Below, one piece after another: positions 103-44,833 of a DNA stretch of 64,000 nucleotides. The stretch covers positions 1,653,232 to 1,717,231 of the forward strand of contig NW_004797285.1 of the NCBI RefSeq assembly GCF_000002075.1. Direction: 5' to 3'. The notes under the pieces are model-generated. The model worked only from the letters and a program-made list of their open reading frames with translations. It ran no database searches and was not told the DNA's origin. This stretch comes from Aplysia californica (taxonomy: Eukaryota). Both the position numbers and the translations under genes were made by a program. How positions within the stretch are numbered: position 1 is the stretch's first letter; every line of letters starts with the position of its first letter.

Positions 103-331
103 TGACAATGACAAAAACCCATGGCATCAAGTAGATTTCCAGACAGCACAGAACTTGTCAGGTATCTTGACTCAAGGAAGTCCATCTTCAGAGAAGTGGG
201 TGTACACCTTCACAGTGAGCACCAGCAATGATGGAATCAACTTTGAAACCATCAAGGATGATCAAGGGCAGGAGGTTACCTATTATGGCAACGCTGACAG
301 GAATACTGTGGCCAGAAACTACTTCCCCAGA
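103..331 (+). CDS. exon: discoidin domain 1, middle
   Basis: tgcag|...|gtaagt; [12 protein letters not shown]...LTQG...[17 protein letters not shown]; phase 2/0. Confidence 0.9.
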
Positions 332-3300
332 GTAAGTGTTGCTAAGTTGTGGAGAAAGTGAGAGGGTTGAGAATATTTTGTGTCCAGTAGTTTTTTATGT
401 TTGTATTTGTTTTCAGAAAGACTATTTAGTTATTGTCGATGCTGTGCTGGAACCTTGTTTACTTGCATTTCAAAATTTTACAGGTGAAACAAAAAAACTG
501 TTTAACGTTGTTAATGTTAACACTTAAAAATTTTGTCAATGTATTGTTATGGGTCTTAGACAAAATCTTGCAATGAAGTATGTGTTTTACCTGAGCACAT
601 TATTACACAATCTGATTTAGCAACAAAAATTTTTTGTGTAGGGAGCTTCTCTGTTTTAAGCCCTGCCCCTTTGAAGCTTGTAAGATGTTAATGAGGTTAG
701 AACAGATCAGACATAGCTTTTTCCCTGGACTAACCTGGCTACCTTTGGGTTGTCTTTAAATGCACACGTTTAACACGCTCTGGGTCATTTTATGATGTCC
801 TGATGGCCTGCTAGTGAGGTATTATTTGTTTAGCGTGAGTGAAAATTTCTTTGTCCCTCTACATATCAAGTGAAATCGATTTTAAAAAGTGACCTTGTCT
901 AAGAAAATAGGAAGTTTCACTGACCCGCCTCTGATGAAGCCTCACTATATTGGGTTAAAGAGGTTTAACGGAGCACTTGTTGCTTTGTGCAGGATGGCGA
1001 GGTTCATGCAAAACTTAAAAGTGCGTTTTTGAGCATTTGTATTTTGAATCTGAAATTAATATTTATACACATTGTGTATCAAGGTATCAGAAATATTTTG
1101 GTGAAAAAAACAAACAATTTTCGCCAAAAAGCTCCCAACATTTAGAAGGAAGTATATCCTGAGATTTCTCTTAAAGTGCTGCAGAATGTATGTGACCAAC
1201 TCCATTGACACTACGCTACAAGAAAAGCTTAATGGGCCAACAGAAGAACTAAGCAGAATGGCATCGTGTATGATAGATGCCATACTTCAAGGATGATAAG
1301 ATTAAGATGAAGATGTTGCAGAGGGAGGATTGACAATGTGGTATTTGACCATTGAATGAATGTGTCTGCAGGTGACTGTAGCCCGCTACGTGCGAGTGAA
1401 TCCAAAGACATGGGCTGCAGGCGGACCTGCCTTGAGGGTGAATTACATCGGTTGCTTTTTCTCGGACTTCTCCACACCGAGGCCGACAGTGCCATTTGTT
1501 CAACCACCAACTGGTCCCACAGGCATCCCAACAGTGTCACCAACCTGGCCGTCCTCCTGGTCATCGATACCCACCTCCCCTACAGTGGCTCCCCCTACAC
1601 CGTTTACACTGGTGCCTAGTAAGTGGAATGATTTCGTATTGTGATAGTGAAAATTATCTTATGTACAATGGGTTCAGTTATGCAACATCCGTGATACACT
1701 GCTGTAAGAAAATAGAGGGGCTCAGGGTATGTTGACCACAAGATAGCAAAAGCATTAAAGAAATTGCTGGTACTACATTTTGATAGGAGGGGCTCCTAGA
1801 CTGAAAGTATTGTTTTCTAATGTGTGTGTGGATTGGGCATTTGTTTCATGTCTGTTGCTGCATTCTGAGAAACATGAGCTGATATATAAACTGCAAAAGT
1901 AAGTGCTGTTTGTCAGTGTGAACGAAAGTGAGTGAAAATGGCTGAAGAGAATCTAAGAAATCACGGTGAAGTAACAGCATGTGTCCTTTTCCAGATGTTA
2001 TTTGCAACGTGCCCATGAACGTGGATGTGGTTAGCTTGATGCCAAATAGGCTGCTGACAGCATCTAGCGATCAAGGCACAGGAACTCTGCCCAGTGATGG
2101 ACGTATGCAAAATCCAGTCTACTCTTGGCAACCAGAGTGAGTCTCTTTTCTTCAGTACTAGTTGTTTCCATCTCATTAGTTGCCTTTGTATGAGAAAGAA
2201 GTAAGTAGAATAATGAAAAAGTATGCAGTCTTTAAGTTTAATTTGTAAATTTCTAAAGCTTTGTTTGAAGGCTACATTTCAGGAACAACCAGTCAATATG
2301 TTTGNNNNNNNNNNNNNNNNNNNNNNNNNNNNNNNNNNNNNNNNNNNNNNNNNNNNNNNNNNNNNNNNNNNNNNNNNNNNNNNNNNNNNNNNNNNNNNNN
2401 NNNNNNNNNNNNNNNNNNNNNNNNNNNNNNNNNTATAGGTGATCATTTTGTTGATTAAAGTTGGCAATACTGGATCATGCATCACAACGTTTATATAAAT
2501 AACAATGCAATTTATTCTTGCTCTCTACGAAAGTATAAAGTTATCGGAAAATTTGTAAAATCATGAATGAAAACGAAGTAAATCATAATAAAATCATATC
2601 AAAACAAAGCACAAAAAATCACAGTTTTAAATCAAATAATGATCACGATTACATCTGACTTTTAAATGCCTTTATGAATAGCTCTTATTGATTGGATTAA
2701 TATGAATGAATATGACTGTGGACAATAGGGCACGATAGAAAACAGTAAATAATATGACCAATTAGAAAAGCCATTAATCATTAATGAGATTCGAACAGAG
2801 TGGTTTACAGGCAGTGTAGTGATAGAATAAAAACAAATCATGGTAAATGAAAACAAATTTTTAACTTGTATGAAAAAGAAAAAATGAGGAGTGAAAACAA
2901 CTTTTGAACTTAAATGGAAAAAAAGAATGAATAATTAAAAACTGCTGTCAAGCAGTTGACCAGTATTAGGTTATGACTATGATAGGTGAAAACAAGTTTT
3001 GAAAATAAATGTTTTAAAGTATGTTATAAAAAAGACCTAAACAATCAGCATATGACTAGATCAGAATATTGAAAATATATTGGCACCCACAATATAGAAA
3101 AAGACTGGCTTACTGTTAGTTCCTTATGTTCAGACTCTGCTGAGGTTTGGTTATCATTGATGTGAGTGTGTTTGCCATGGCCATGGCAAAATGGAGACAA
3201 TGGTCAAGCTGAGCAGTGTCTGACTGAAGCTTTGATGAGATTTCAGACAAGTCTGACAGGGTGTTTTCATAGAAAATAAAAATCAATAATTCCCCCCATT

Positions 3301-6300
3301 CAGGAGTCCCATACTTCGCGGCATTCAGATTTTGAATGAACTTTGGTGACCCCTAAAACCAGTGCTCACACGTGCCGTATCTTGCGATTAAGTTGTGATG
3401 TGAACGCACAGGTTCACTGACCGGTCACGGTGGCGAACCCGACAAGATGGTTGTTTAACTTTCTTTTCTTTTTTTCCCCTCAAGTGACAGCACAGGATAT
3501 ATATTGATTTGTTTTCATGGTGTCAGATTTTTTTAAAACAAAAAAGGGCACTGCAAAAATTGCCGCAGTTGACCCTTTGATTTTAAGGGCATTACGGCAG
3601 ATTGCAAAGACACCAAGGCAAATTGCCGCCGTGCTGCGGTCTGTTTCAAGACCTGTGTGTGTGTGAGTGAGTGTGTGTGTGTGTGTATTTTGTATTGATG
3701 AAAGTGGTGTGCTAATACAGCAATGATTATGGAAATCTTTTGCAGTGACAACGACAAAGACCCATGGCATCAAGTAGATTTCCAGACAGCACAGAACTTG
3801 TCAGGTATCTTGACTCAAGGAAGCCCGTCTTCAGAGAAGTGGGTGTACACCTTCATAGTGAGCACCAGCAATGATGGAATCAACTTTGAAACCATCAAGG
3901 ATGATCAAGGGCAGGAGGTTACCTATTATGGCAACACTGACAGGAATACCGTGGCCAGAAACTACTTCCCCAGAGTGAGTGTTGCTAAGTTTTTGTAGAA
4001 ATTGAGAGTTTTGAGAATATTGTGGGTCTAGAGGTGTCTATGTTTGTATTTGTTACTGATGAAGTGGAGTCATGCTGAGTTTTTCAGGAGTTGTAAAAGT
4101 TTGATTAGATGTAAAAAGTAGGTGTGGAAATACAGATATGAAAGGTGAAGCTTTTGACTATCAGAAGGAAGTATGCGTTATGATTTTTTGTAGGTCATGC
4201 GGAAAATGCACTGAAAATGTGATATTTGACTATTGAATGAAAATGTCTGCAGGTGACTGTAGCCCGCTACGTGCGAGTGAATCCAAAGACGTGGGCTGCT
4301 GGCGGACCTGCCTTGAGGGTGAATTACATCGGTTGCTTTTTCTCGGACTTCTCCACACCGAGGCCGACAGTTCCATTTGTTCAACCACCAACTGGTCCCA
4401 CAGGCATCCCAACGGTGTCGTCAACCTGGCCGTCCTCTTGGTCATCAGTACCTTCAGTTGTGTGTGTGTCGAGGTGGTCCTCTTGGATAAATAACGTCTC
4501 CCCCATTGGCAGCTCTGGTGATTTTGAGAAGATGTCTAAAGATGAGTTGACGAGATTCTGCCCAGGTGGAAACATCACAGACATTCAGTGTGTTGATTCT
4601 GATACAAATGATGACTCTGTCTCTTTGGCAGAGGCGACTTGCACAGTGGAAAGGGGACTGCGTTGCATTAATAACCCCATTACTGGTGTTCCATGTAGAG
4701 ACTACAAGATCCGATATCTTTGCAACTGTTCAGGTACATCGTTTTTATATTTGTAAACAAGTAGTTTGTGTGGTGTCATGGGAAGACCTGCTTTTTTCTT
4801 TTCGAATTGAGATTTTAGTGAAACCAGAAAAATCACTTATTTTTATAAATTTTGATATGCGTTTTATTTCATAGAACATAATTTTTACATTGATATTTCA
4901 TCATTTTGTTATGGAACGTTGCAACTGAAAAATGATTTTACATTCTAGTGGCTGAATAAAAAAAATTTGCCTTTGTCTTCCATAATTGATGCTTTTTGTA
5001 ACCTAGTACACCAAGCAGTTGTCCACAGCAAACAGGGAAGTGTCGTACATCACTAGAAAGGCCATCTTATACCCTTGATTGATAACCAGCAGTCCTGGAA
5101 GATATTTTCACTAAAAAAATTACAGCGCAATAGTAGGCCTATTTATGATTATAGATGTGTCAAAGTCTTCAATAGCAACAGATAATTCAAAACGGTGCCA
5201 ATATTTTACCCAAAATAACATTTGTGTTGCGTTTTATCTGTTTGAAAAGCAAAATTTCTACGGTTACTTTATATTTTTTTGTTCTGAATGTAAACTAGTG
5301 GAATCAATTATAAAGTGTAAAGAAGTCATGTGGACTTTTTTGTCACTTTCACTTGCTCCCCACCAGGGCAGTGCTACTGATTGAAGTTGTCTTTAGGCCT
5401 TTCCCAAAGAGGGGATATTAGCATGTTCTCATGCACAATAGAATTGTAAATAGGCTGATTTACCAATATCATGCTCATACTGTGCCGGAACGACATGTGG
5501 AAACTGCTGCTTTTTCTTTTCTCATCTTTACTATCGTCATTTGCCTTTACTTCTTTTGTATGTTTGTCACTCTCCATTGAACTGCTGTTTCTGGGATACC
5601 TTGATAGTTGAAGCAGACTTTGTGCTTTTGAGGCTAGAGAGGTGAATAGAGTAAGCCTGGTTCCTCATTTGGACTTTTCTGTTTACGTCCACCCCTTGGC
5701 GCTCATAACAGTATGATGTAGCGAGCACTGTAAAATCTTGCTAAGACAAACATGTCCTGTTACTTTTTTCCCAGTTTAACACCCAGTTATATTGAAGATA
5801 TTGAAACAAAGTTAGTTGTTGCTTTGGACCAATCAAGATATTGACCACAAAAAGGTGCAAAATTCTTTTCCTCCAATTTCTTTTTTAGGAGGAGATGTGG
5901 CCACATGTTTGAATGAAATAAAAATTGTCTTATTTGGGAGAATTGCTGCTTGATAGCTGGCTCAGTTGAGAAAAGTTTTTGTCAGGCGCATTCTATTTTC
6001 ACTTCCTATTAATCTACTTTCTATCTTTCACTAGACTACAAAAAGTTTTCATTGTTATGTTTTTAAGTTCACATGATTCAAATCAGCGAGTCAAATTTTC
6101 CCCGTTGTATCCCTTGAATGCTTGCTGTGAGCAGATAATGGTTTATTGTCCGATTGCTTTGACACTGCAGTGTACTGTGCTACACTAAAAGGGAGCTAAT
6201 CGCTTTAATAAAACAAAACAAATTTCAATGACGACTTTTGCAACTTGCAAGGAAAAAGTTGTCGTTCATAATGACTTACAACCTTGGAGGATAGAGGTGC

Positions 6301-9300
6301 CATTTAGAATTACTCCTGTGACATTAGTCTCATCAGCTGGCTTACTTTTATAAATGAGTAATTTTCGTCTGTTCGAGGTAACAAAAATAAAGTTCACTAA
6401 TAATAATTTGCCAATGCACACATAATGTTGCATGGCACACCAGTAGGCCAGCAACTAAACAAAAATATTTTAAAAAGAAATCTTGATCCAGTATTTATAA
6501 AGCTTCTTTCTTTGGGCCCTGTATAAACACCACCCTTTGGGTGCATACAAAGGATCACTGCAATATATGATTTACTGTGACCTAACTTACCATTAATGCT
6601 CATTTGGGGTCAGCGACAGCCCCCACATTTCATAGATTTTTCCTCCAAAGACCGTTGTTCAGACATCTCGAAAGGTACACGCAGGTCTGTTGGACCATTT
6701 TTCATAGGTGTAGTATAGATGAAAATAGGTTAATTTTGTATTGTTTTGGATGCATGCTGTAAATCACCTATTTTTAAAAACTCACTTTAAGCTAACATTG
6801 AAGAAAGTGTGTTGGAATCATATTTTGCAATAGCCCTCTTTAGACAGGCTTTTTAGATGTACAAACAAAAAGAACTGAACAAGAGTTTTCTTAAAATCTT
6901 GTTCAATTGATTTGCCTTATACACAAACATCTGCTTAGGAGCATTTACCTCTATATTTCTGGACATAAATAAATGCCTTATATCACAATTAAAGTTGTAC
7001 TTTATTTATAATTCATTCAACTGTATACAATGATGTTTGTGACCTTAGATTTATATCAGTTAATATATTTTCAGATGCGTTCACACCAACACCCAGTGTT
7101 CAACAATTTGGATCTCCAACTCCCTCACCTAGTGCTGGACAGTTTGGGTCCCCAACTCCCTCACCTAGTGCTGGACAGTTTGGATCCCCAACTCCCTCAC
7201 CTAGTGCTGGACAGTTTGGATCCCCAACTCCCTCTCCTAGTGCTGGACAGTTTGGATCCCCAACTCCCTCTAGCGGTGAGTATTGTATTTTGCTAAGGAA
7301 GTATTGTATATTGGGTAATGCAGTTAGATACAGTATAATCCCCTTACATTGTATTATGGACAGCCGATGTATTGACATTTTGACATATCAACATATTTTC
7401 CAATTATGAAATTTTCCTTCTTTATCTTCACTATACAATTTCTCTTATGCCAACTTTTTTTTCGGCCCACTCTGCTTTATTGACATGCCTCCTGGGTATC
7501 TGACGAAGCCCACAAACATAATAAATGGGGAGATAAAGCCACGTCAACGCAATAGTTCTTTAGTAAGTCCGCATACCTGCCAAGTTTCCTATATCGACAC
7601 ACCAGACTTAAGTAGGTCATGTAGGGCCTACACAGTATGTGTAGTCTCCAACACAATGCAGTGCCTCACAGACGTGAGCGTCTCGCGCGCTGGGAATCAC
7701 ATCCCTACCCCCACTTCCGATCGCTCACTCCCTTCCCCATCCCATTCTAAATCTGTCGCTGGCAAGTGCCACGATCAGTGCATAGTTAGTTAGTGCCTCG
7801 CATTTCCATTTTCCCCAGCAAACGGCCATAAACAGGCCTTACAAGGATGCTACAACAAAGTTTGCGCTGGTGTGTAGTGTGCGCCTCGCATTGCTCGGTC
7901 TTCGGTACCATAACTCTAACCCCCCTCCCCTCTGCTTCTTGTTAGTTTCGCTGTGTAGTTGTGTGAATCAAGGGAAGCAGCCAGCTTATTAAAAAAAGTA
8001 GTGTTGTCTTTTTACCGCTGACCTTTCCTTGTTTTTTCCTCTTTGAATTTATATTTATCGACATTTTTATATATCTTTACTTCAAATCCACTTTTCAAAG
8101 CATATCGATATAAGCGGATTATACTGTAATTTATAGATTTTGAGGTGCCTTCTTTGTGGTACATTGATGATTGTTGATGCCCTCATTATTAAAACAGTTC
8201 CATTCCTTCTAGCTCTCCTTTATTTATTGTCATTGTGTTGGGACTTTTTTTTGCATCTTAAGTGCTTTTCACAAGGACTTAACATTGGGCCCTTGACGGG
8301 ATTCAAACCTCAACCTTATGGTTGATAGCCTGAGAACCTAACCTCTAGGTCACCTATGTCACATTTGATACTATGCTTGAAATGATGGATACTATACTTG
8401 AGAAGACGTGATTAGTTCATTTGACTTATTATGTATGCAGCTCTGGCAAATATTTGTTGCATGAAACCTTTTTGCCTATACAATCTTATCAGGTCAGTCT
8501 TTGACACATTTCAGGTCCTGCATGTCGGTACTGGTCTCCTTGGGTCAGCAATAGTGTTCCTGATCCTAGTGCTGGAGAGCTTGATATGTTTTTCCAGAAT
8601 CCAAACGTGCCAGGGGCTTGCTCTGAGAAAGAAGTTATTGGGTATGTTAGCTCTTGTGGTAAAAGAAAGCTGAAATTTGCTTGTACCATTTACAAATATG
8701 CTTTGTGATTCATTGTTTTGACTGTATTCCTGTTCATGGATACCACAAATTGCTGTTCCCTGTCATTTGTTTTTGTCTTCTTTTTTCTTCAACTCTTCTT
8801 TTTCAAGTGTTGTGTTTGTAAACTATGTAACAATAAAAAATCTGTAGCTAATGTCATTGCGTTTGTTTTTTATTTCTTTTTGTTTTTACATAAGGAACAG
8901 AAAATATTTTTTAACATCCCTGTATATTTTGTTTTGGGCTCTATCCAAATCTAAATCTTCACATACCAACTTTCAATGTGTCTACTGTTTTATGCCAAAA
9001 AGTATGTATATTGTATTTATCTGTCATTGATACATTGTCTTCTCTTTTTTTACTTGTAGAATTGAGTGCCGAGAAAGAGTAAGCCGAAGGAGCCATGATC
9101 CCAATGATGATTTGGTAGAGTGCTCCTTGCAAGGTGCATTTGTGATGTGCACAAACATTCCTGGACACATCTGTCCTGACTATGAAGTGAGAGTTTTGTG
9201 CGATGTTTGCTTGAGCCCCTCATCATCTACATCTCTTCCTCCACCCAGTGGTAGTCCTGGTTCCACAAAACCACCGCTTCCTTGCTCAGAGGGCTGGAGT

Positions 9301-18991: not shown

Positions 18992-19022
<31 letters not shown>

Positions 19023-21129: not shown

Positions 21130-21188
<59 letters not shown>

Positions 21189-36100: not shown

Positions 36101-39100
36101 GAGGTCAAGATAACTTGCAAAGTCATTGGTCACTATTTATAACTTTGACCTGTAATTTACTAAGTCATTCTCCATGTAAGGAATACTGAAATTTTCCATT
36201 GAAAAAAGTCAGGGTCCTGGTCGAAGTAGGTCAGCCCTATATGTAGGGCTTGCGCGCTTCCAGGGTTAAAAAGCAACAATGAAAATTTCCTGATCCTCTC
36301 TATTTCAGTGACAGCACCATTACAACTGGACTCACAGATGTCTCAGATGTCTGAGCCGACTGAGGATCTGGGTATGTTTTTCTCTTTTTTTCATCTGTTT
36401 CCTTGAAGCAAATGTAATTTCATGACTTTGACCCCTCTGATTACTTCAGAGAACGTCTTTGTCTTAAATTGATTTAATCTGCTTGCCTTCCAGCAGTTTT
36501 AAGATTAAAATAACATCTAGCATCTTTTTCATGAGGATTTCAAAAGATCTTTAGATTCCTTCATTGACGACTCATTGAGACCAGAATTGATATCCACAGT
36601 TTTGCGGTATTGATTTTTTTTTTTTTTTTACAACTGGACTACTTCCACAACATGTGTCATGAAGCAGTCGATATTGCATAAAATTTTGCAGTAAAGTATG
36701 CTGAAATAAAAACAATGTTAATCATATTGTAGTTTATTTTGAATACTCTTGCCTTGAGGCTTCTTTTTCTCTTCAGTTGTTATTAAGTGTGAAAATGGTT
36801 GTGTTTTAAAATGTACTGATACTACAGACTGTGCTGTAAGATATCTAGAATAGATCCATTTTGGAAAAATTGATTTTTAAAGATATGTTGAATGACATAC
36901 CATTAAAACAAACACTCATTTCGTTATCTGTTTTCTACTCTCTAATGGCAGAGCCCAGTGGACAGTACTTACCCATTCCTTTCTAAAGCTTATACAAGTA
37001 CTGATTTTTTCATCTTCTCTGTTAATGCAAAAGTGAATAAGTGAAACAAATTCTATAACATTTTTATAACTTAAAAAATCCATCTTCCCATCAGATAAAT
37101 GCATTGTGTGGGATGACTGGCAAGATTTATCTCAGCCTGGACTAACTAGCAAGAATGACATTGAGCCCATTGAAGATCTAGTGAGGATGTCTCCTTCATG
37201 CAAAGACCCTGTCCAGATTGAGTGCCGAACAGCTACCCCTGATCTCAAACCTGCCCAAAATAGTGGTCAGAATGTTGTCTGCAATCTCTGGGATGGTCTG
37301 CGTTGCACAGCCGATAAGGCTAATACTTCAATGTGCTATAACTATGAGGCCCGCCTTGGCTGCTGGAAGTCTACTGCAGAATGTTGTACGTATTTTTACT
37401 CTATTTCTGTTATGCTTTAGAAAAGTAAACTAGTGTTAGTTCAGTGTGAGAGTGCTACACACTTTCCTCAAAATAGAACAAGGTATATATATGTAAATAT
37501 GTATTGATTCTGTCTGGACTTTGTGGGCTTTCCTTTCTATACGACGCTACAAAAAGCCAGGTTTTATTATTCAAAAGTTTCATTCCAATGGTTTAATTTC
37601 TTTTCAAATTTCAATCAAATGCAGCATTTTGATTTATAAAGAACAAAGCACTTGGATCTTTGGTTTATTGAGTGGGAATGGGCTGTCGAACTTCTTTATG
37701 CATTAATGAACAATGAACCTTACCTTCTATGGAAACCATGAACATCAGCAACTGATAATGCAAGCCTTTTAATAACATTGTATTTTCATAGAGACAAAAC
37801 CCAAAGGAGAAGGGGCTAAATGTAGAAGCTGACCGAGCAGAACAGTTTGAGTAGGATAGAAATAAAAGGCAAAGATGATGTCAGAAGCCTTGGGCACTTA
37901 CATACAACATTAGTGATTGAAGGTGCTTGGCAGTGAATTAACACAGTGCTCTTCTTTTTGACTAGCTTCGAATTCTGCCATTTAATTTTCTATTCTTATT
38001 TTTCCAGTGTCCAAAAGGTCCACTGAACCGAAGAAAGTATCGTCAGCATTGAGAGAAGCAAGGATGTGCTTCTCTGGCATGGATTCTACTCACTGTCCCC
38101 ACATGGGCTGTGCAAATGGCTTGTATTGCAACGGTGTCAAATGTGTTCCAAGAAATGAGTGTCCATGCATGGTTGATGATACAGTTATCAGAGTGAGTGA
38201 AGAGTTTTGTTTTTAATTGTAAATTATAAGACTTACTACTACTTACGATGCATCTTCTTGGAAACTTCAAGAAAGATCCAAGTTCCTTTACTATCATTAC
38301 CACGGTGAAATACTGCTCTTTATGAATGCAGTTATTATCTGTAGCTTGATAAGAGAGGATGTTAGACACAGAATTATGACTTTCAGTATGTTCCAAATTT
38401 CAGTTCTGAAGTAGTAGCTTAATTTTGACAAAAAAGCATAAGTATACAAACATCTTTTTTAAAGCAAAGCTGACTACAATGCTCTTTGACTTTCCATCAT
38501 TTGTTTACCGTATCCTGTTCATGCAACTTTCTATTCATTGTTAAAAGAAGATGTAACTTGTACCTTTCGTTGAAACTATGTTTAATATAAGATGTTATCA
38601 TTATCCCTAACCCATGCATTCAAGTAGGTCAAATAGCTGTGATATTTGACCCAGTTTTCCGTATAATTTTGGGATCTTGTATTATTGTAAGCTAAGAAAA
38701 CATAAGTTTAAAGGATTGTGTTTTTGACCCTTTCAGCCGGGAGCTGTTGTTCGAAATAAAGACTGTGAAACATGTCAGTGTATTGGAGGAGAAGTTCTTT
38801 GCATGCCAAAAGTCTGCCCAGCCTGTCAGGTGGTGAGTATCAGAAGAACAGTGTCAAGTATGATTTTGAGAGACATTTGGGCTATGTGTAGGCCTTTGTA
38901 TGTATGCATATGTGTATGTGTGTGTGTGTGCATGTGTGTGTGTGCGTGCGTGCGTGCATGTATGTGTGTGAAAAGGGGGACAGGGGTTACTGCTTAATTT
39001 TATTCTTTAAGTTGAATGTTCTGCATGCTTTCCATTTCTTTGTGATTTGGGCTGGAAGCAGGCTTTAAAAAAAATTTACATCAACAGAAAGGATCTTTTA

Positions 39101-42100
39101 CAATTGTTAAGGATCATCCAACCTATAGCCTCAAGAATGACTATAAAAGAATGAATGAAACAGTATAATAGGCTTAATACTAAAAGAGATGGTAAGCAAA
39201 TTTCATTAAGGGAAGTTTGTATGACAACTCCTTCAAGCATATTTCCCTTTCCTAAACTCCACGTGTTCTCCATCCAGGGAGAGTCCCAGCTGAACAAAGA
39301 GACATGTAGCTGTCAGTGCAATACCTGCAGCTCCGGGGAGTTCCAGTGTGCCACTGGATTGTGCATTCCGGCAGAGAAGCGTTGTGACGGTGTCATTGAT
39401 TGTGCTGATGATGAGCACAATTGTGGTAAGCTGCCTTGATTTTAATTGACTGAACACCTGGTGTGATACGGGTTTGCAATGCTTAACATTTAGGGTCTTG
39501 GGGAAATGCTCCCTTTTTAATTCTCACATGCACAAGTGTGGATTCACTCAAATTTTCTGATGCACCAAATTGAATTTTAACGTTTTTTTCAACCTCAACA
39601 CCAAAGTTTGACTGAGATTCATAGTTATATTTGTTAGCTTCATATATGAGTTAATACAAAACAACTTTTTCACTTTGCTTCCTTTATCCTTTGTTGTATT
39701 ATTATAATGAAATAAATAGAACAGTGTAGCAGTGTAGAATTTCTGTTCCCCTTCTTTTCTTTCAGCACATACAGCTATTTTTGTTCGCAAAGTACAGCCT
39801 GAAAAAAGAAAAGGTAAGTCATACAATTTTATGCTTTTTCAGATGCTCTTTTTAAAAATTTCATTGCCAACATTTCTGAGCTCATAAAAGAATGATGTTG
39901 TATGAAAGAAATGATTTAAAGTGAATAATATTTTCGATAACACACACATCAGTTTCTCAAAGACTGAATTATCTACAAGAAATAAACATGAGTATCAGCG
40001 AATTGCTTTTATTTGTTTAGTTTTCTTTTATGGTCAGGTCTTTTAGACCCATCGTTGTCAGTAAAGAATCAACATGTATGTAAAATTGGATGAAACTATT
40101 CCGTAGAGTCGTCATGAAGAGTTTTTCCCTTGAATTGTTACAAAGAAAACTTTTTGTACCGGTACTGCAAATTCATCATTGGTCTTGTTTTTGCTTCTAG
40201 TGTTGATTATACACGTTTCAAATGATATTTTTTCAAAGTAATATTGACTCTAGTCCTCTACCATAAAATCTCAGGATAAGTTCACTTTTATCTCTTTGGA
40301 ATGCTTGTGAGCTGTACTCTTTGAGAGTTATGAAAAGTAGGAAAGTTGCTTTATGTTAATTTAAGTGCTTATTTTCCCCAGGAAATTCACATAAAAAAAA
40401 CCAACTGAACGTTTGTTGGTGAACTGTGTAGATTGGAAGAGAAATAAGAGACAGTGTATATAGGCTAGTCATTAAAAGTGACATGCATTGATAACTATGA
40501 AATCCTGTGGCTTATCCATAAGTTTATGTTTAGGCCTCTGATACTTTTTCTTTTTGAGTTTTTAACTTGATTTGAACTAATCCACAGGTCAAACAATGTG
40601 CCACTACACTATGGGTAATGGTCCTGTGAATTTCAAGGTAGGAATATACAAATACGTTTCATTTTTTATAACTTGGATTCATTATAAGTTAGCACAAAAT
40701 TATTCTATGTATCTGGGCATATTTAAAGTAACTTGATGTAGAAACATTTGTATGGGAGCGATACAACATAAGCAGATCACTTTGCTGTAAGTTTTATAGC
40801 TTTGGTCAATTAAGCATAAAAATTTTGTGCACTCTTTTGGCTTTTTAAAAGTTGAATGTTAATTATATTTGTAAAAACAAACTGCACTGTTTAGAAACAG
40901 TCTTCGGTACTAAACAATACCCTTTAAAAAGACCATCTTTATTTCATTAACAGTGGGAAATTTCATCTCGGCTTTGTCACATTTGCGAAAGGTGTCAAAG
41001 ATATTATCACAAAGAAAACACTGACTGGGAACAGTTCTCTTTAAAATTAGGCTCAAATACAGATAGCAAGTTATAGTAAGTCATTGCTAAGAGGTTGAAT
41101 GTTGTCCATGACATACTTTTCTTTGGGGACTCTTCTAAATCTTCTGTTTACCACTTCCTTGGATGTGACCCTTACAGAATGCTCACAGGGTCTGCAACAT
41201 CTATGAATGCAACACCATTAACACTTGCAGTACCGAAGGCTCATATTGTGAAAAACCCTTGGGTACCGCACCAGTTTAGAATGCTAAAGCTGAGGAAGAA
41301 TATTTTTTAATTAAAAAAACCTTGGCAGCTCAAGAAACACGCTTTAAAAATTCAGAGAGGTTCATCAACCATTCAGCTACAATATAGAGTGACTTCCTTT
41401 GGTATTTACTTCAGTGCAGTGCGTCCATTCGTTGTTTAATTATTTTTAGTGAACCTGGTTGTGTCGGTGACTAAATTTGCCAGTGGTAGTGAGCGCAAAC
41501 TACGGTCTGGAGACTAAAAGTACAGTAGAAAGTGTTAATTTGAGTTTGCTTTTGTACAGTGCATATATATATACAAATATATTCATTTGTGCTACTTCTA
41601 ATTCTTACTGTCCTTCTATTAGGTGGGTGACAGCTGGCAAGATGGATTGTGCAAATTGTGCACTTGCAAGCTGACTGCGAAAGGAACTGCTGAATCAGTA
41701 TGTGATGCTCCAGCCTGTCCAAAATGCCAGCATGTGAGTGAAAGGAAAGGCAACTACATAGACTGATTGCTGAAAATTAGCATTTAGACAAAACACTCTG
41801 GTCTAACTCTTTGCATGTAGCTGGCTTCTTAGGTGAATTTGTGTACGTGCAACTTGCTTTCTAACATGGTTCTTCATTTCAACTTCAAATAAAATTGACA
41901 TTTCTCATTTCAAGTGCACCATCCTTACTTGTTACTTTTAAATAAAGTAAATAAATACAGTGTTTATTTTGATTTGCACTTTTAATGGTTTTCTGTTACA
42001 AAGTGTCTGATGAAACCTCTACTAAGGTTATAAAATACCCTTCCATAGTGTTTTCACAGTTGATTTTTTATTTTACTTAATTCCAAATGCGTGATTATAT

Positions 42101-44833
42101 TAAATTACAAAATTGTCTTTCTATATTATTACCTCAGGGGGAGGTCCAGGTTCCTGTCTCTGGTCAGTGCTGTGGGCAGTGTGTAGCTGCTGGGTGTAAA
42201 GCCAATGGAAATGTATATAAGGTAAGAATACAGCAATGTGATGGATGCTGAAGTTTGTTAGCCCTACACTTCCAATCCATACATCTCTTTAAGACTTTTT
42301 ATTTCCGGATCTCAGTCCCAAGATTTTGATCACGATGCTATGATTTTTATTGTAGTATCTCTATGCAATGCAGCAAAAGTCAGTCCACCAAAATCAAACT
42401 CAAAGGAATAGAAAATAAATGCATTTATGTAACTATTGTAACCACAGCTGCACAGAATATAATGCATCCAAGCCTTCTAATTGGCTTGTTTGTCTGAACT
42501 TTATGGCCTTGTTGTATTGCCTCTTTATGTAGTATATACACCATTCATTAACTGAACAAGGCTGATAATTAGTAATACATAATGTAGCAATTATGATACC
42601 AGCTTAAAGATTTGTTAGTGATTAACTTGAAATGGATGATGTGTATCTCACTATTTGTCTTTAAACTTTCACAGGTTGGAGAAGTTATACCTGGTGCTCG
42701 AAAGTGCTTCACAAAGACATGCCAGCATGATTCAGTGGAAGGTCACTACTTTGTTCAAGAGTCACAAATTGAATGCCCAAAATTGGATACTCTAAAAACT
42801 TGCACAGATGTGAGTATGTTGTGTAATGTCAGTCTGTTTACTGTTACATTTTAATTCCACAATCTTGAAATTGTGCTTTATAAATTCATTCATAATGAAA
42901 TTCCTATATATGCATAGCTTTAAGAAAAGACTAAAAACAAAAGAAATGTGGGACCTGTGCCAAATTTTCTAATCCATTCTTAGACAGCAAAGTGTAATTT
43001 TTAAAAGATTTATCAACTCCTTGACTGTGCTGTCAACATATGTCATACAACTCAGTAATCCGCTGCCAGGTGCGCTGTTAACATATCTCATACGACAGCT
43101 AAAACCCTTATTTTGTTTTTGATGGTATCTCAGCTACTTCCATGTTTTGAATAAAGAGAGTGATATCGTTTTAACTATGAGATCATATTACAGACCATTA
43201 ATTGACAGGAAGCATGGGTACTATAACCAGTAAAACAAAGCAAGGTGTGTTGTCTTTCTTACACACACTCTGCAGGACAGTCAGAACCGACCTGTTGAAT
43301 CGGAATTCTTGTTTAGTTTCAGTGCTTTCAATGTGTTTACATTGTAATGGCTTTTTCTACGTGGGTCTTGTCAATAGCTAAAGTCATATATTTTTATTTA
43401 TCTATTATTGATATAATATAGAATGACAGGAAGCATGAGCTTTGTGACCAATAAAACAAAGCGAGGTGTGTTGTCTTTCCCCTGCACATCATGCGAGACA
43501 GAGCCAATGCATTGAGTTGGAGTGCTTATTCAGTCTTAGTACTTTCATCAAGTTATTTGCAGTATTTTGCCTTGTTCTACGCAGGTCTTATCATTATCAA
43601 TGAATGAATTCATCTTTTCATGAATCTCTCTCTATTGAATATATTATAGCTTTACCTATCTGTCTTTATATTAATAAGCAAACAGCTTATTAAAGAATGT
43701 GACCTGTGATGTCTTGCACATGGTAGAAATTTCCATTGGCATGGAGTGCATATGGTTTGTAGCCAAGGGGTTAAAGAATATTTCTCAAAGGGACTGCAGC
43801 TTAATTTTCTGCTCTGAAAAACTTGCATGGCTACTTAAAAATGTACAGTTTGCAGTAGCTTTATTTATTCATCAAATATTTGTTTGCCTTCCTGACATTA
43901 CAGGTAGCAGACATGTTGGACTCAGATGGCTGTTGCTTGAAGTGCATTCCACAAAGTAAGTTGACAGAGAAAGCCAGGGATTCCTAATCCTTTTAAAGTT
44001 ATATAATATCTTTGACCGCCTCAGAGAATCTACTTTTTATGTTGATGTCTTAATGCAGCTTGGTATGTTGTGACTTCTTTCTCTCCCCCCCCCCCTCCCC
44101 TTTCAACTTGGTCAGGAGCATAGGCCTTCAACCATTACAAAGTTTTCTACTTCCCTTGTGCTTCTTTCTTCAGCTGTATTCAAGTCTTGCTCAGTTTCTT
44201 GGCTTCTACCTCCACCTTTATCTACCAAGTTCTTCTATTCCTCTGACCTGTGGGGATTCTATCTCAGTTCCTTTTGGGTTGTATTTGTTGGGATTACATT
44301 AAAGTTTTTTTGGGAGACAATATTGAGCTGAAACTTTTAAAAATTTCACGTTAGATTTCTAAAGTGAATTAAAAATTTTTTGTTCAGCTTCCATTGTAAA
44401 ATAACACTGTATTCTCTGTTCTTGAAAAGTATCTATCCTTGAGTATCAGTTCTGTCATCTGTAGATACATTAGCAATTATGACAAGGTTTTTCATTCAAT
44501 TGTTTTTCAGGTATTACTCCAGCTGAAATTCCATGTGAATCTTGCAAGCCTCAGTTGATGTTTGAAGATCCAGAGAAGTCTGTTGGATTCATCAAATTGT
44601 CAAAGCCTAATGGTGTTCAATGTGAGAATACAAAGCCAATCAGAGACCTTCAAGAATGTTCTGGCTTCTGTGAGTCAAAGGATCGCTATACTGAAACTGG
44701 ATTCCAGCTAAGCAGACGATGTTGTCAAGCTCAAAACAAAAGCACCCAAGTTGTAAAGCTTCACTGTTCTGATGGAACATTCTTGAGCCACGAATTGGAC
44801 ATACCACAGACATGTAGCTGTAGTGCATGCTGA
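103..44833 (+). CDS. Large secreted hemocytin/mucin-like mosaic protein, 3' part (40 exons, ~2,800 aa in window): discoidin x3, CysD x14, PTS linkers, TIL, VWC-like, LDLa, CTCK
   Basis: Exons traced by hand with AG/GT boundaries and matching phases at every junction; domain motifs recognised in translation; stop TGA at 44831-44833 after TCSCSAC; AATAAA downstream. Exceptions to continuous frame are an N-gap (13776-13875) and a 35-bp duplication (16359-16428). Confidence 0.92.
1372..1618 (+). CDS. exon: discoidin 1 C-terminus + P/T/S linker
   Basis: [14 protein letters not shown]...LRVNYIGC then PTS; phase 0/1. Confidence 0.9.
1995..2136 (+). CDS. exon: discoidin domain 2 N-terminus
   Basis: ccag|...|gtgagt; CNVPMNV...LLTASS...[12 protein letters not shown]; phase 1/2. 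Confidence 0.88.
3746..3974 (+). CDS. exon: discoidin 2 middle (near-identical to 103-331)
   Basis: same length (229 nt), phases and almost identical translation. Confidence 0.9.
4253..4733 (+). CDS. exon: discoidin 2 C-terminus + linker + CysD 1
   Basis: [12 protein letters not shown]...[10 protein letters not shown]...FCPGG..TDIQC...[14 protein letters not shown]; phase 0/1. Confidence 0.9.
7075..7275 (+). CDS. exon: [12 protein letters not shown] repeats
   Basis: ttcag|...|gtgagt, 201 nt, phase 1/1, open frame. Confidence 0.85.
7101..7272 (+). repeat. 36-bp coding minisatellite (also at ~13700-13775+gap and ~16168-16345)
   Basis: unit CCTAGTGCTGGACAGTTTGGATCCCCAACTCCCTCA. Confidence 0.9.
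7331..8126. mobile_element. Non-autonomous pogo/Tigger-like element
   Basis: TA|CAGTATAATCC...GGATTATACTG|TA terminal inverted repeats with TA TSD. Confidence 0.75.
8515..8641 (+). CDS. exon: CysD 2 N-half
   Basis: [16 protein letters not shown]...ACSEKEVIG; phase 1/2. Confidence 0.85.
9060..9314 (+). CDS. exon: CysD 2 C-half, linker, start of CysD 3
   Basis: IECRER...[10 protein letters not shown]...[10 protein letters not shown]; phase 2/2. Confidence 0.87.
10363..10604 (+). CDS. exon: CysD 3 remainder
   Basis: [19 protein letters not shown]...[10 protein letters not shown]; phase 2/1. Confidence 0.87.
11071..11234 (+). CDS. exon: linker + CysD 4 N-half
   Basis: [23 protein letters not shown]; phase 1/0. 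Confidence 0.88.
12141..12294 (+). CDS. exon: CysD 4 C-half
   Basis: ITDIQCYT...[13 protein letters not shown]; phase 0/1. Confidence 0.88.
12490..13470 (+). mobile_element. 5'-truncated RTE-clade LINE
   Basis: [36 protein letters not shown]; internal stops; (GAT)n tail at about 13455-13470. Confidence 0.88.
13673..14172 (+). CDS. exon spanning N-gap: 12-aa repeats + CysD 5
   Basis: repeat before gap; [10 protein letters not shown]...[13 protein letters not shown] after gap; single-exon status across the gap is assumed. Confidence 0.8.
15099..15182 (-). mobile_element. 3' end of an RTE-like LINE running into an N-gap
   Basis: minus strand reads [16 protein letters not shown] followed by a (GAT)n tail. 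Confidence 0.6.
16158..16669 (+). CDS. exon: 12-aa repeats + CysD 6 (frameshifted by a 35-bp tandem duplication as assembled)
   Basis: 512 nt; removing one 35-bp copy gives a 477-nt open frame [14 protein letters not shown]...[14 protein letters not shown]. Confidence 0.8.
17780..18121 (+). CDS. exon: CysD 7
   Basis: [13 protein letters not shown]...DIECRV...[10 protein letters not shown]; 342 nt, phase 1/1. Confidence 0.9.
18549..18629 (+). CDS. exon: P/T linker
   Basis: [26 protein letters not shown]; 81 nt, phase 1/1. Confidence 0.75.
18830..19022. repeat. degenerate (AAT)n microsatellite
   Basis: direct inspection. Confidence 0.9.
19480..19711 (-). mobile_element. Decayed tRNA-derived SINE
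   Basis: CCAGGTACCCATT...AATGTCTTTCCTAAGAACACA...AACCACTAGACTAC resembles a reversed tRNA-head plus core SINE. Confidence 0.45.
19825..20075 (+). CDS. exon: TIL-like domain
   Basis: [18 protein letters not shown]...CIPGC...CVPKEMCTC; phase 1/0. Confidence 0.87.
20709..20892 (+). CDS. exon: short VWC/E-like module + start of CysD 8
   Basis: [20 protein letters not shown]...CGWSEWMNE; phase 0/1. Confidence 0.87.
21133..21217. repeat. (CT)n microsatellite
   Basis: direct inspection. Confidence 0.9.
21421..23406. mobile_element. Non-autonomous DNA transposon with 31-bp TIRs and 8-bp TSD (hAT- or P-like)
   Basis: CACAGAATTCTACACTAATAGAA... at both ends; TSD GGTAAAAC at 21413-21420 and 23407-23414. 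Confidence 0.85.
23630..23851 (+). CDS. exon: CysD 8 remainder
   Basis: GDMELL...CRDV...[13 protein letters not shown]; phase 1/1. Confidence 0.88.
24231..24557 (+). CDS. exon: CysD 9
   Basis: [14 protein letters not shown]...[14 protein letters not shown]; 327 nt, phase 1/1. Confidence 0.9.
25139..25285 (+). mobile_element. 5'-truncated SINE
   Basis: CGTTGTGTCCTTGGGAAAGGCACTTTA core and GGCGTTAAACTC end. Confidence 0.5.
25471..25884 (+). CDS. exon: linker + CysD 10
   Basis: 414 nt, phase 1/1; [14 protein letters not shown]...[14 protein letters not shown]. Confidence 0.9.
25911..26776. mobile_element. Inverted dimer of a ~430-bp MITE family
   Basis: two opposite-orientation copies flanked by ATAT; family motif ATCAGGCGCTCGTCAA. 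Confidence 0.75.
26948..27361 (+). CDS. exon: linker + CysD 11 (duplicate of 25471-25884)
   Basis: 414 nt, about 5 substitutions versus the previous exon, intact splice sites. Confidence 0.87.
27821..27883 (+). CDS. exon: S/T linker
   Basis: [20 protein letters not shown]; 63 nt, phase 1/1, gtaagt donor. Confidence 0.75.
27982..29013. mobile_element. Non-autonomous piggyBac-like element
   Basis: TTAA|CTCATTCGCTACG...CGTAGCGAATGAG|TTAA. Confidence 0.8.
29767..29942 (+). CDS. exon: CysD 12 N-half
   Basis: [12 protein letters not shown]...IECRDA..EMGQ; phase 1/0. Confidence 0.88.
30251..30419 (+). CDS. exon: CysD 12 C-half
   Basis: [31 protein letters not shown]; phase 0/1. Confidence 0.88.
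31211..31510 (+). CDS. exon: CysD 13
   Basis: 300 nt, phase 1/1; [14 protein letters not shown]...[14 protein letters not shown]. Confidence 0.9.
31918..31992 (+). CDS. exon: linker containing GKR
   Basis: [24 protein letters not shown]; 75 nt, phase 1/1, cag|gtaagg donor. Confidence 0.7.
32264..32424 (+). CDS. exon: discoidin 3 N-part
   Basis: [10 protein letters not shown]...ITASS...ARLDSQGSW...QYIQ; phase 1/0. Confidence 0.9.
32800..32946 (+). CDS. exon: discoidin 3 middle
   Basis: [17 protein letters not shown]...SLDGINW; phase 0/0. Confidence 0.9.
33463..34200 (-). mobile_element. L2/CR1-type LINE 3' fragment
   Basis: minus strand TGTACAGCGCATTGAG...GCGCTATATAAAT + (ATT)n tail; degenerate RPLRS...KTHLF C-terminus; contains an N-gap; 5' boundary approximate. 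Confidence 0.65.
34429..34579 (+). CDS. exon: discoidin 3 C-part
   Basis: IFEGNTD...[21 protein letters not shown]; phase 0/1. Confidence 0.9.
35197..35914. mobile_element. Non-autonomous piggyBac-like element
   Basis: TTAA|CTCTTTTTATCC...GGATAAAAAGAG|TTAA. Confidence 0.78.
36309..36371 (+). CDS. exon: short linker
   Basis: [20 protein letters not shown]; 63 nt, phase 1/1. Confidence 0.65.
37095..37385 (+). CDS. exon: CysD 14
   Basis: CIVWDDWQD...IECRT...[10 protein letters not shown]; 291 nt, phase 1/1. Confidence 0.88.
38008..38192 (+). CDS. exon: linker + TIL-like half module
   Basis: SKRSTEP...[20 protein letters not shown]; phase 1/0. Confidence 0.85.
38737..38832 (+). CDS. exon: VWC-like
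   Basis: [30 protein letters not shown]; phase 0/0. Confidence 0.85.
39278..39425 (+). CDS. exon: LDL-receptor class A module
   Basis: [34 protein letters not shown]; phase 0/1. Confidence 0.9.
40588..40637 (+). CDS. exon: VWC start
   Basis: [16 protein letters not shown]; phase 1/0 bridges the flanking exons. Confidence 0.75.
41623..41733 (+). CDS. exon: VWC
   Basis: [15 protein letters not shown]...CDAPACPKC; phase 0/0. Confidence 0.87.
42138..42221 (+). CDS. exon: VWC end / next VWC start
   Basis: [24 protein letters not shown]; phase 0/0. Confidence 0.87.
42675..42809 (+). CDS. exon: VWC-like
   Basis: [16 protein letters not shown]...IECP...TCTD; phase 0/0. Confidence 0.85.
43904..43955 (+). 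CDS. exon: VWC-like end
   Basis: [15 protein letters not shown]; phase 0/1. Confidence 0.82.
44511..44833 (+). CDS. terminal exon: C-terminal cystine knot (CTCK)
   Basis: C..C..ECSGFC..RRCC..LHCSDG..TCSCSAC-stop. Confidence 0.92.

What the first reader, a model, noticed from the sequence alone, without database searches (positions are those of the whole stretch)
103..44833. Giant CysD-expanded hemocytin/mucin hybrid: 14 CysD domains interleaved with discoidin domains and only short PTS linkers
Seen: 40 phase-compatible exons giving discoidin x2 - CysD x7 - TIL/VWC-like - CysD x6 - discoidin - CysD - TIL/VWC-like - LDLa - VWC-like - CTCK. Known: vertebrate gel-forming mucins place CysD within long PTS regions and lack discoidin domains; insect hemolectin/hemocytin has discoidin domains but not a large CysD array. 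Inference: a lineage-specific mucus, adhesive or clotting polymer that relies on many CysD cross-linking modules plus lectin- or lipid-binding discoidins and dimerises through its cystine knot.
Basis: partly seen in the sequence, partly recalled or inferred. Interest (0 to 1): 0.78.

Follow-up and report, generated by a model that had tools for sequence, protein, structure and literature searches.

The report
Sea-hare giant discoidin-CysD mucin gene
This is the rear two thirds of a real, expressed sea-hare (Aplysia californica) gene for a giant secreted mucin/von Willebrand-type polymer; snails and clams all carry the same design and it was outlined in print in 2016, so it is well read but not new.

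Summary
Scanned exon by exon, the + strand of 103-44833 encodes 2 discoidins, 7 CysD, a TIL-like module, 6 CysD, a discoidin, a CysD, TIL/VWC-like modules, LDLa, VWC-like modules and a cystine knot ending in a stop.

RNA contigs from two studies confirm five consecutive GT..AG junctions across 16.6-20.9 kb.

The gene is larger than the finding. About 58 kb upstream on the same strand lie a signal-peptide-like exon, three VWD-C8-TIL assemblies and more discoidins. These are colinear with full-length abalone and zebra-mussel proteins.

Fourteen CysD is a lower bound. RNA joins the 16158-16669 exon to itself, and unplaced contigs hold four more such CysD exons and six more discoidin exons. A 35-bp frame-breaking duplication at 16359-16428 is absent from other data.

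The "lineage-specific hybrid" reading fails. Gastropods and bivalves have colinear proteins with 8-19 CysD among discoidins, LDLa and a knot, and horseshoe crab has a related form. NCBI labels them mucin-5AC-like or hemocytin-like. Lang et al. 2016 already reported CysD inserted among F5/8 domains in Lophotrochozoa.

Verdict: new member of a known kind. Function is untested and is inferred to be a disulfide-linked gel polymer.

The parts
103..1618 (+). Discoidin A: middle exon 103-331 and last exon 1372-1618, which also carries a 53-residue PTS linker. Its first exon lies in the unread stretch upstream of the window.
   Evidence: Pfam F5_F8_type_C 54 bits. Acceptor at 103, consensus donor after 331, phase 0/0 join. 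Linker composition.
1995..4733 (+). Discoidin B in three exons (1995-2136, 3746-3974, 4253-4733). The third continues through a 43-residue linker into CysD1. The gap 2305-2433 sits in the first intron.
   Evidence: F5_F8_type_C 53.7 bits and Mucin2_WxxW 47.4 bits. Phases 2/1 and 0/0. The unit is 88-92% identical in DNA to discoidin A and to the upstream unit in L006.
7075..7275 (+). PTS exon made of 4.7 copies of a 36-bp (12-residue) Ser/Pro/Thr/Gly-rich unit.
   Evidence: Tandem repeat, 96% matches. Open frame and 59% S/T/P. Strong donor after 7275.
8515..10604 (+). CysD2 split over 8515-8641 and 9060-9458. The second exon runs through a short linker into the start of CysD3, which is completed by 10363-10604.
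   Evidence: Mucin2_WxxW partial hits of 18.6 and 20.9 bits, below cut-off because the domains are split. Phase-compatible chain. Genome profile hit at window 10370.
10828..12294 (+). CysD4 in two exons (about 10828-11234 and 12141-12294). The first acceptor is uncertain.
   Evidence: Mucin2_WxxW 40.1 bits for the second half. Donor 8.4 and acceptor 7.7 at the 11234|12141 join. The better acceptor at 10934 is out of phase.
13673..14172 (+). PTS repeat plus CysD5, one exon interrupted by the assembly gap 13776-13875. Frame continuity across the gap cannot be judged.
   Evidence: The same 36-bp repeat runs into the gap. An open CysD reading starts at 13878. Profile hit E 7e-35. Donor 6.9 after 14172.
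16158..16669 (+). PTS repeat (4.9 units) plus CysD6. The reference carries an exact 35-bp tandem duplication (16359-16393 / 16394-16428) that would shift the frame.
   Evidence: Searches show the duplication and the frame break. Contigs of a DNA-like run and of an RNA run skip exactly these 35 bases. Mucin2_WxxW 44.8 bits.
17780..18629 (+). CysD7 exon 17780-18121 and an 81-bp Thr/Pro linker exon 18549-18629.
   Evidence: Mucin2_WxxW 76 bits. Both exons and their GT..AG joins are seen in RNA contigs of runs X4 and X6. My model had missed the small exon.
19825..20075 (+). TIL-like cysteine-rich module.
   Evidence: Pfam TIL 21.5 bits, full profile length but under the 24.5 cut-off. Exon ends confirmed by RNA contigs. 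Colinear with the Haliotis, Sinanodonta and Pomacea proteins.
20709..23851 (+). Exon 20709-20892 (end of a VWC-like module, 17-residue linker, start of CysD8) and exon 23630-23851 (rest of CysD8).
   Evidence: Mucin2_WxxW 57.4 bits for the second exon. The acceptor at 20709 is seen in RNA, and an RNA contig reads on from about 20894 into the 23630 exon.
24231..27361 (+). Three single-exon linker+CysD units: CysD9 (24231-24557), CysD10 (25471-25884), CysD11 (26948-27361). All are phase 1-1.
   Evidence: Mucin2_WxxW 44.8, 47.7 and 47.9 bits. Splice scores 5-7. CysD10 and CysD11 are a 458-bp duplicate at 98% identity.
29767..31510 (+). CysD12 split over 29767-29942 and 30251-30419, then single-exon CysD13 (31211-31510). 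The gap 29034-29235 lies in the intron before it.
   Evidence: Mucin2_WxxW 29.1 + 32.8 bits for the two halves and 41.9 bits for CysD13. The CysD12 halves are 61% identical to one Haliotis CysD.
32264..34579 (+). Discoidin C in three exons (32264-32424, 32800-32946, 34429-34579). The gap 33568-33741 lies in its second intron.
   Evidence: F5_F8_type_C pieces cover profile positions 2-56, 38-82 and 84-127. Phases 0/0 on both joins. 46-61% identity to the matching discoidin of Haliotis and Sinanodonta.
37095..37385 (+). CysD14, a divergent copy.
   Evidence: Mucin2_WxxW 61.5 bits. 51% identical to Haliotis residues 4032-4126 and to Pomacea residues 1163-1266.
38008..38832 (+). Two cysteine-rich exons (38008-38192, 38737-38832). 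They are TIL/VWC-like by cysteine pattern only.
   Evidence: No Pfam hit. Conserved and colinear in Haliotis (4150-4233) and Sinanodonta (4105-4175).
39278..39425 (+). LDL-receptor class A module.
   Evidence: Ldl_recept_a 36.7 bits against a cut-off of 24.1. Present at the same place in the Haliotis, Sinanodonta, Pomacea, Elysia and Limulus proteins.
41623..43955 (+). VWC-like modules in four small exons (41623-41733, 42138-42221, 42675-42809, 43904-43955). The join from 39425 to 41623 is out of phase, so an exon is probably missing in between.
   Evidence: Pfam VWC 20.2 bits, partial. Phase-0 chain.
44511..44833 (+). C-terminal cystine knot (CTCK) and TGA stop. A polyadenylation-like signal follows at 44935.
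   Evidence: Cys_knot 30 bits against a cut-off of 24. Matches the VWF CTCK structure 4NT5, E 1.3e-4. Acceptor at 44511. Stop and signal.

Best explanation
Positions 103-44833 are the 3' two thirds (about 2,850 codons in about 36 exons) of one very large Aplysia californica gene. It is the sea-hare ortholog of a mollusc-wide family that NCBI labels 'mucin-5AC-like' or 'F5/8 type C domain-containing protein'.

The whole protein reads: signal peptide, three VWD-C8-TIL assemblies, a tandem run of discoidins, then CysD modules joined by short O-glycosylatable linkers and interrupted by TIL/VWC-like modules and one more discoidin, then LDLa, VWC-like modules and a cystine knot.

Inferred mechanism, by homology with VWF and MUC2/MUC5:
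- Tail-to-tail disulfide dimers form through the knot.
- Head-to-head multimers form through the third D assembly in the secretory pathway, giving linear polymers.
- The many calcium-binding CysD modules make non-covalent contacts between and within chains.
- The discoidins bind sugars or lipid surfaces.

The most likely product is an extracellular gel or mucus network that is rich in folded protein and poor in long glycan brushes.

Shown here: the domains, their order, splicing of the central part, expression, and orthology. Inferred: one transcript from the D assemblies to the knot, polymerisation, ligand binding, and tissue.
For: - Domains.
- Upstream signal-like exon, VWD, C8 and TIL exons. 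They are colinear at 45-77% identity with residues 238-1400 of a 7,888-residue Haliotis protein and a 7,613-residue Dreissena protein.
- The window's unique exons are colinear with Haliotis, Sinanodonta and Pomacea proteins from CysD7 to the knot.
- Architecture strings of relatives. Pfam counts in relatives, for example 13 CysD + 5 discoidins + LDLa in Sinanodonta.
- Breadth in molluscs.
- RNA contigs with exon-only coverage and five GT..AG joins.
- The frame-breaking 35-bp duplication is absent from other data.
- Species: a 432-residue NCBI Aplysia californica protein is 98-99% identical to window exons.
- CysD and assembly biology: PMC3195396, PMC7599080.
- Prior description of the architecture: PMC4948705.
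Against: - No read or contig links the upstream D assemblies to the window. 22.4 kb of N lies between them.
- Haliotis has both full-length models and models that start at the discoidins, so a separate promoter is possible.
- One exon join (39425 to 41623) is unresolved and one exon contains a gap.
- The tissue of the RNA runs is unknown to me.
- No mollusc member has been studied biochemically in the papers I could search.
- Insect relatives act in haemolymph clotting, not in mucus.
Confidence: 0.75

Rival explanations
1. It is the mollusc counterpart of insect hemocytin/hemolectin in function as well as ancestry. On this reading it is a haemocyte-stored clotting and nodule-forming lectin released into haemolymph on wounding or infection, not an epithelial mucus component.
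For: - It shares three D assemblies followed by discoidins with hemolectin (PMC4948705).
- The Limulus 'hemocytin-like' protein has the same CysD-discoidin-LDLa layout.
- A snail transcript annotated hemocytin rises more than 8-fold after schistosome exposure (PMC5685644).
- The short PTS linkers are unlike classical mucins.
Against: - The two C-terminal VWD-C8-TIL units of insect hemolectin are absent from the window.
- The Biomphalaria transcript was not shown to be this ortholog.
- CysD arrays with PTS linkers are a mucin hallmark.
- Aplysia has a second such locus on contig 41, so mucus and haemolymph roles could be split between paralogs.
Confidence: 0.3
2. The window's exons are a separate gene or transcription unit that starts at the discoidins. 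It would give a polymer that lacks D assemblies and can only dimerise through the knot.
For: - Haliotis rufescens models of 4.5-4.7 thousand residues begin at the discoidins and end at the knot.
- No RNA evidence here bridges the 22.4-kb unread stretch.
Against: - Same strand and order as in the 7-8 thousand-residue proteins of Haliotis, Dreissena and Mactra, which carry VWD, C8, TIL, F5/8, CysD and VWC.
- Near-identical discoidin units lie on both sides of the unread stretch.
- I found no signal-peptide exon inside the window. The first window exon starts in mid-domain at an acceptor site.
Confidence: 0.15
3. The locus is a decaying pseudogene, or an assembly artefact in which duplicated pieces inflate the domain count.
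For: The reference has a frame-breaking 35-bp duplication, five gaps, a 98% identical exon pair and one out-of-phase join.
Against: - The 35 bases are missing from independent DNA-like and RNA contigs.
- All other exons are open and phase-compatible.
- Spliced RNA exists in at least two studies.
- The evidence points to collapse rather than inflation: RNA joins the CysD6 exon to itself, and unplaced contigs hold further copies.
Confidence: 0.04

Closest known systems
Mollusc 'mucin-5AC-like' / 'F5/8 type C domain-containing' giant proteins (e.g. Haliotis rufescens XP_048245088.1 and XP_048245023.1, Sinanodonta woodiana KAL3831915.1, Pomacea canaliculata PVD30852.1, Dreissena polymorpha mucin-5AC-like)
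   Same: Colinear from the D assemblies to the cystine knot. The shared order is discoidin run, CysD array with short linkers, TIL-like module in mid-array, late discoidin, CysD, LDLa, VWC-like modules and knot. Unique exons are 40-77% identical.
   Different: - Copy numbers of discoidin and CysD units differ between species: 8-19 CysD in relatives, against at least 14 and probably 17 or more here.
- Haliotis has six CysD between D3 and the discoidins. I did not find these in the read part of the Aplysia locus.
- None of these proteins is functionally characterised as far as I could find.
Insect hemolectin / hemocytin (Drosophila Hml, Bombyx hemocytin)
   Same: [quoted passage not shown]
   Different: Insects have the '3 + 2' layout, with two further VWD-C8-TIL units after the discoidins, and no CysD. 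Here there is no VWD in the window and at least 14 CysD.
Vertebrate gel-forming mucins MUC2, MUC5AC, MUC5B
   Same: D1-D3 head, CysD modules of the same fold family (E down to 2e-15 against solved MUC5B, MUC2 and MUC5AC CysD), PTS between CysD modules, VWC modules and a CTCK tail.
   Different: - Vertebrate PTS regions run to hundreds or thousands of residues. Here linkers are 13-66 residues, or about 90 in the unplaced copy.
- Vertebrate mucins have no discoidin or LDLa and keep a fourth D assembly, which is absent here.
Limulus polyphemus hemocytin-like protein XP_022255312.1
   Same: D assemblies, then CysD modules interleaved with discoidins, then LDLa. This shows the design predates molluscs, as Lang et al. 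2016 proposed.
   Different: Fewer CysD (7) and a different tail in my scan (TIL modules, no knot detected). Sequence identity is only in the 40s per cent.

Membership tests
VWF / gel-forming-mucin superfamily (as defined by Lang et al. 2016) | Three N-terminal VWD-C8-TIL units | tested here: met
   VWD, C8 and TIL Pfam hits above cut-off in exons 37-58 kb upstream on the same strand, colinear with Haliotis and Dreissena proteins. Their link to the window's exons is inferred, not shown by RNA.
VWF / gel-forming-mucin superfamily (as defined by Lang et al. 2016) | C-terminal cystine knot (CTCK) | tested here: met
   Cys_knot 30 bits against a cut-off of 24. VWF CTCK structure 4NT5, E 1.3e-4. 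A stop follows directly.
VWF / gel-forming-mucin superfamily (as defined by Lang et al. 2016) | PTS (Pro/Thr/Ser-rich) domain | tested here: met
   15 linkers of 13-66 residues with 35-65% S/T/P, three of them built from a 36-bp tandem unit. They are short by vertebrate standards. O-glycosylation was not tested.
MUC2/MUC5-type mucins | CysD (Mucin2_WxxW) modules within the central region | tested here: met
   14 copies, with Pfam scores up to 76 bits. Profile hits to solved MUC5B, MUC2 and MUC5AC CysD.
MUC2/MUC5-type mucins | Fourth VWD-C8-TIL unit after the central region | tested here: not met
   No window open frame on either strand matches the VWD/C8 queries or the D4-bearing C-terminal parts of relatives. 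Only the VWC and knot exons matched.
Insect-type hemolectin/hemocytin ('3 + 2' VWD) | F5/8 type C domains after the third D assembly | tested here: met
   F5_F8_type_C in L006 and in the window.
Insect-type hemolectin/hemocytin ('3 + 2' VWD) | Two further VWD-C8-TIL units C-terminal to the discoidins | tested here: not met
   None between the discoidins and the stop codon.
Lophotrochozoan F5/8-CysD mucin-like proteins (Lang et al. 2016; NCBI 'mucin-5AC-like' of molluscs) | [quoted passage not shown] | tested here: met
   Order in the window. The same order and colinear matches in gastropod and bivalve proteins.
Lophotrochozoan F5/8-CysD mucin-like proteins (Lang et al. 2016; NCBI 'mucin-5AC-like' of molluscs) | Disulfide-linked multimer formation and gel or clot function | not testable with these tools
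   Needs protein biochemistry. I found no mollusc study.

The most novel reading that the evidence does not exclude
This mollusc family may be a distinct physical type of mucin. In it, gel properties would come mainly from dozens of folded, calcium-binding CysD modules and lectin-like discoidins spaced by very short glycosylated linkers, rather than from long glycan brushes. In Aplysia both module types would be undergoing recent tandem expansion: discoidin units are 88-92% identical, CysD exons 98% identical, and further copies sit on unplaced contigs. If so, it could be a tractable model for how CysD spacing sets mucus mechanics, and it would be close to the ancestral bilaterian state linking hemocytin and MUC2/5.
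Probability: 0.3. Interest if true: 0.5.

Novelty: new member of a known kind. Interest (0 to 1): 0.3.

Why it matters
It gives a checked exon map for the Aplysia ortholog of a giant, conserved but biochemically unstudied mollusc mucin/hemocytin-like protein. I found no full-length Aplysia model of 2,600 residues or more in the word search. The only Aplysia hit is an unplaced fragment mislabelled as a nuclear pore protein.

It also flags concrete assembly errors: a 35-bp false duplication and collapsed CysD and discoidin arrays.

For mucus biology, the family is a natural experiment in CysD number and spacing. For comparative immunology, it is the likely counterpart of insect hemocytin. It does not reveal a new kind of protein.

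Tried and rejected
I rewrote it with coordinates only.
- My first splice scan set some cores too wide. It missed the consensus discoidin donor after 331 and 3974, and the acceptor at 34429. Both were corrected after reading the context.
- The model missed the 81-bp exon 18549-18629 until the RNA contigs showed it.
I used local phmmer/hmmsearch with window-derived queries instead.
- The supplement of Lang et al. 2016 with per-species architectures is not held, so I could not check whether Aplysia was drawn there.
- Snail and limpet mucus proteomics papers mention VWD/mucin-like proteins but nothing identifiable as this family.
- The scan's own notes held nothing on this family.
Every search was exon by exon by reference, or used database proteins.
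- I did not fetch the letters of contigs C2660 or C2294, or of the NCBI fragment's contig, because they probably represent the unread stretches. Only their hit coordinates are used.
- The pseudogene reading was rejected because of the spliced RNA and the absence of the 35-bp duplication in other data.

Full report
**Where and what.** The window is contig 15, 1,653,232-1,717,231, + strand, of a 927-Mb assembly in 4,332 contigs. The species is Aplysia californica. An NCBI protein from that species (XP_035829643.1) is 98-99% identical to window exons.

**Observation.** I listed stop-to-stop open frames and scanned them one by one, by reference, against Pfam.
- The + strand between 103 and 44833 holds pieces of three F5/8 type C (discoidin) domains.
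- It holds fourteen Mucin2_WxxW (CysD) domains. Nine are in single exons and five are split over two.
- It holds one LDLa module and a cystine knot that ends at a TGA at 44831-44833.
- The TIL-like (21.5 bits) and VWC-like (20.2 bits) modules are below Pfam's cut-offs, and two cysteine-rich exons have no Pfam hit. These labels rest on cysteine pattern and on conservation in relatives.
- A profile of nine window CysD copies hits the solved CysD structures of MUC5B, MUC2 and MUC5AC. The last exon hits the VWF CTCK dimer structure.

**Exon model and gaps.** A splice-site and phase search gave a chain of about 36 exons.
- Single-exon CysD units are phase 1-1, as expected for shuffled modules.
- Four gaps (2305-2433, 15183-15282, 29034-29235, 33568-33741) fall in introns whose flanking exons are phase-compatible.
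- The fifth gap (13776-13875) lies inside a PTS+CysD5 exon. The frame differs on its two sides and the gap length is an estimate, so continuity there is unknown.
- Two places remain unresolved. The acceptor of the exon near 10828 is uncertain, and the join 39425 to 41623 is out of phase, so a small exon is probably missing there.
- No gap was filled.

**RNA and independent DNA.** Of the public runs that hold words of 16000-21000, some hold about the exonic share only. I laid four runs on the stretch.
- One 1,644-nt contig of run X4 joins 16669|17780, 18121|18549, 18629|19825 and 20075|20709, all GT..AG. Contigs of run X6, from another study, show three of these joins and read on into the 23630 exon.
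- This confirms my predicted ends and adds an 81-bp linker exon. It also ties the first CysD array, the TIL-like module and the second array into one mRNA.
- The exact 35-bp tandem duplication at 16359-16428 would break the frame between the PTS repeat and CysD6. Both a DNA-like run and an RNA run skip it, so it is an assembly error or a rare allele.
- In two runs the end of exon 16158-16669 joins back to its own start. This means several near-identical PTS-CysD exons follow each other in the real gene.
- Three further observations agree with that. The NCBI fragment has three such CysD copies before the start of CysD7. Unplaced contig C2660 has four copies spaced about 1.4 kb apart. Word depth in the DNA-like run is several-fold higher over this exon, which is suggestive only.
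- Fourteen CysD is therefore a lower bound.

**The gene is larger than the finding.** The first window exon starts in the middle of a discoidin, so I fetched 60 kb upstream.
- The 22.4 kb next to the window reads N.
- Beyond that, on the same strand, lie a signal-peptide-like exon and VWD, C8 and TIL exons forming three D assemblies. Two more discoidins follow.
- These exons are colinear, at 45-77% identity, with residues 238-1400 of a 7,888-residue Haliotis protein and of a 7,613-residue Dreissena protein.
- The discoidin units on both sides of the N stretch are 88-92% identical in DNA, introns included.
- Unplaced contig C2294 holds six more copies of the discoidin middle exon. The discoidin run is therefore probably much longer than the two seen in the window.
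- No VWD or C8 is present in the window on either strand.

**Relatives.** The CysD profile finds 1,580 representative proteins, many of them giants with 10-32 CysD copies.
- Names and sources show mollusc proteins labelled mucin-5AC-like, mucin-5B or F5/8 type C domain-containing. They come from Haliotis, Gigantopelta, Pomacea, Nucella, Batillaria and Elysia, and from Sinanodonta, Potamilus, Pecten, Mizuhopecten, Mytilus, Mactra and Dreissena. There is also a hemocytin-like protein of Limulus.
- I scanned these locally with queries cut from the window and the upstream loci.
  - Haliotis: three D assemblies, 6 CysD, 3 discoidins, CysD, 2 discoidins, 10 CysD, discoidin, CysD, discoidin, CysD, LDLa, VWC.
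  - Sinanodonta: 4 discoidins, 11 CysD, discoidin, CysD, LDLa, CysD, VWC, knot.
  - Pomacea (a partial model): CysD, TIL, 6 CysD, discoidin, CysD, LDLa, knot. This is exactly the second half of the window.
- Pfam confirms 13 CysD, 5 discoidins, LDLa, VWC and TIL in the Sinanodonta protein.
- The window's non-repeated exons map in strictly increasing order onto these proteins.
- The word search listed no full-length Aplysia model of 2,600 residues or more.

**Literature.**
- Lang et al. 2016 (PMC4948705) describe insect hemolectin as three D units, F5/8 domains and two more D units. They state that the F5/8 domain characterises lophotrochozoan mucin-like proteins. [quoted passage not shown]
- CysD domains form non-covalent dimers (PMC3195396). 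They are calcium-binding beta-sandwiches that clasp D assemblies during MUC2 filament assembly, with linker length setting their reach (PMC7599080).
- A snail transcript annotated hemocytin is induced by schistosome infection (PMC5685644).
- I found no biochemical study of a mollusc member.

**Mechanism.**
- Shown: the domains, their order, expression, central splicing and orthology.
- Inferred from VWF and mucin biology: knot-mediated tail dimers, D3-mediated head multimers, lateral calcium-dependent CysD contacts, and discoidin binding to glycans or membranes. Linkers are only 13-66 residues, so the polymer should be dominated by folded modules.
- I favour an extracellular mucus or gel role (about 0.55) over a haemocyte clotting role (about 0.3). 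A paralogous CysD-discoidin locus on contig 41 could allow both.

**Verdict.** The claims of lineage specificity and of a novel hybrid are not supported. This is a new (Aplysia) member of a known, widespread family. The reference is locally mis-assembled, and the domain counts are lower bounds.

No N stretch was filled or looked up.

Noticed in passing
window 16359-16428: An exact 35-bp tandem duplication in the reference shifts the frame inside the PTS+CysD6 exon. Contigs of an independent DNA-like run and of an RNA run lack it, so it is probably an assembly error.
   Followed up: yes
G000 contig C2660 (hits at 27-290, 1373-1636, 2768-3031, 4128-4391, minus strand): A small unplaced contig holds four near-identical CysD6-type exons about 1.4 kb apart. 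It probably belongs to the collapsed 13.7-16.7 kb part of this gene. NCBI's protein from it (XP_035829643.1) is misnamed 'nuclear pore complex protein DDB_G0274915, partial'. I did not fetch its letters.
   Followed up: partly
G000 contig C2294 (six hits between 2 and 10634, minus strand): An unplaced contig holds six copies (95-96% identical in protein) of the discoidin middle exon. It probably belongs in the 22.4-kb unread stretch just upstream of the window, which would make a long tandem discoidin array. I did not fetch its letters.
   Followed up: partly
G000 contig C41, about 1,248,300-1,284,200, plus strand: A second locus has at least seven CysD hits and two discoidin hits interleaved. 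It is a paralogous gene of the same family.
   Followed up: no
window 25456-25913 and 26933-27390: A 458-bp duplicate at 98% identity covers little more than the CysD10 and CysD11 exons (period 1,477 bp). It points to a very recent exon duplication or to gene conversion.
   Followed up: partly
window 12551-13006, plus strand: A 152-residue open frame that I take by eye for a reverse-transcriptase fragment (retroelement remnant; not scanned against any library) sits in the intron between CysD4 and the PTS+CysD5 exon.
   Followed up: no
window 52384-54403, plus strand: Open frames downstream of the gene look by eye like reverse transcriptase/RNase H and integrase, suggesting an LTR-type retroelement. 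I did not scan them. They are not part of the finding.
   Followed up: no
window 400-1300: The intron after the first discoidin exon holds an interspersed repeat with at least 45 copies at 68-80% identity across the genome.
   Followed up: no
L009:1521-1760 (contig 15, about 1,594,750-1,594,990): The likely first coding exon of the gene ends in a hydrophobic signal-peptide-like stretch. There are N runs in the first D assembly region (L009, L008), so the head is also incompletely assembled.
   Followed up: partly
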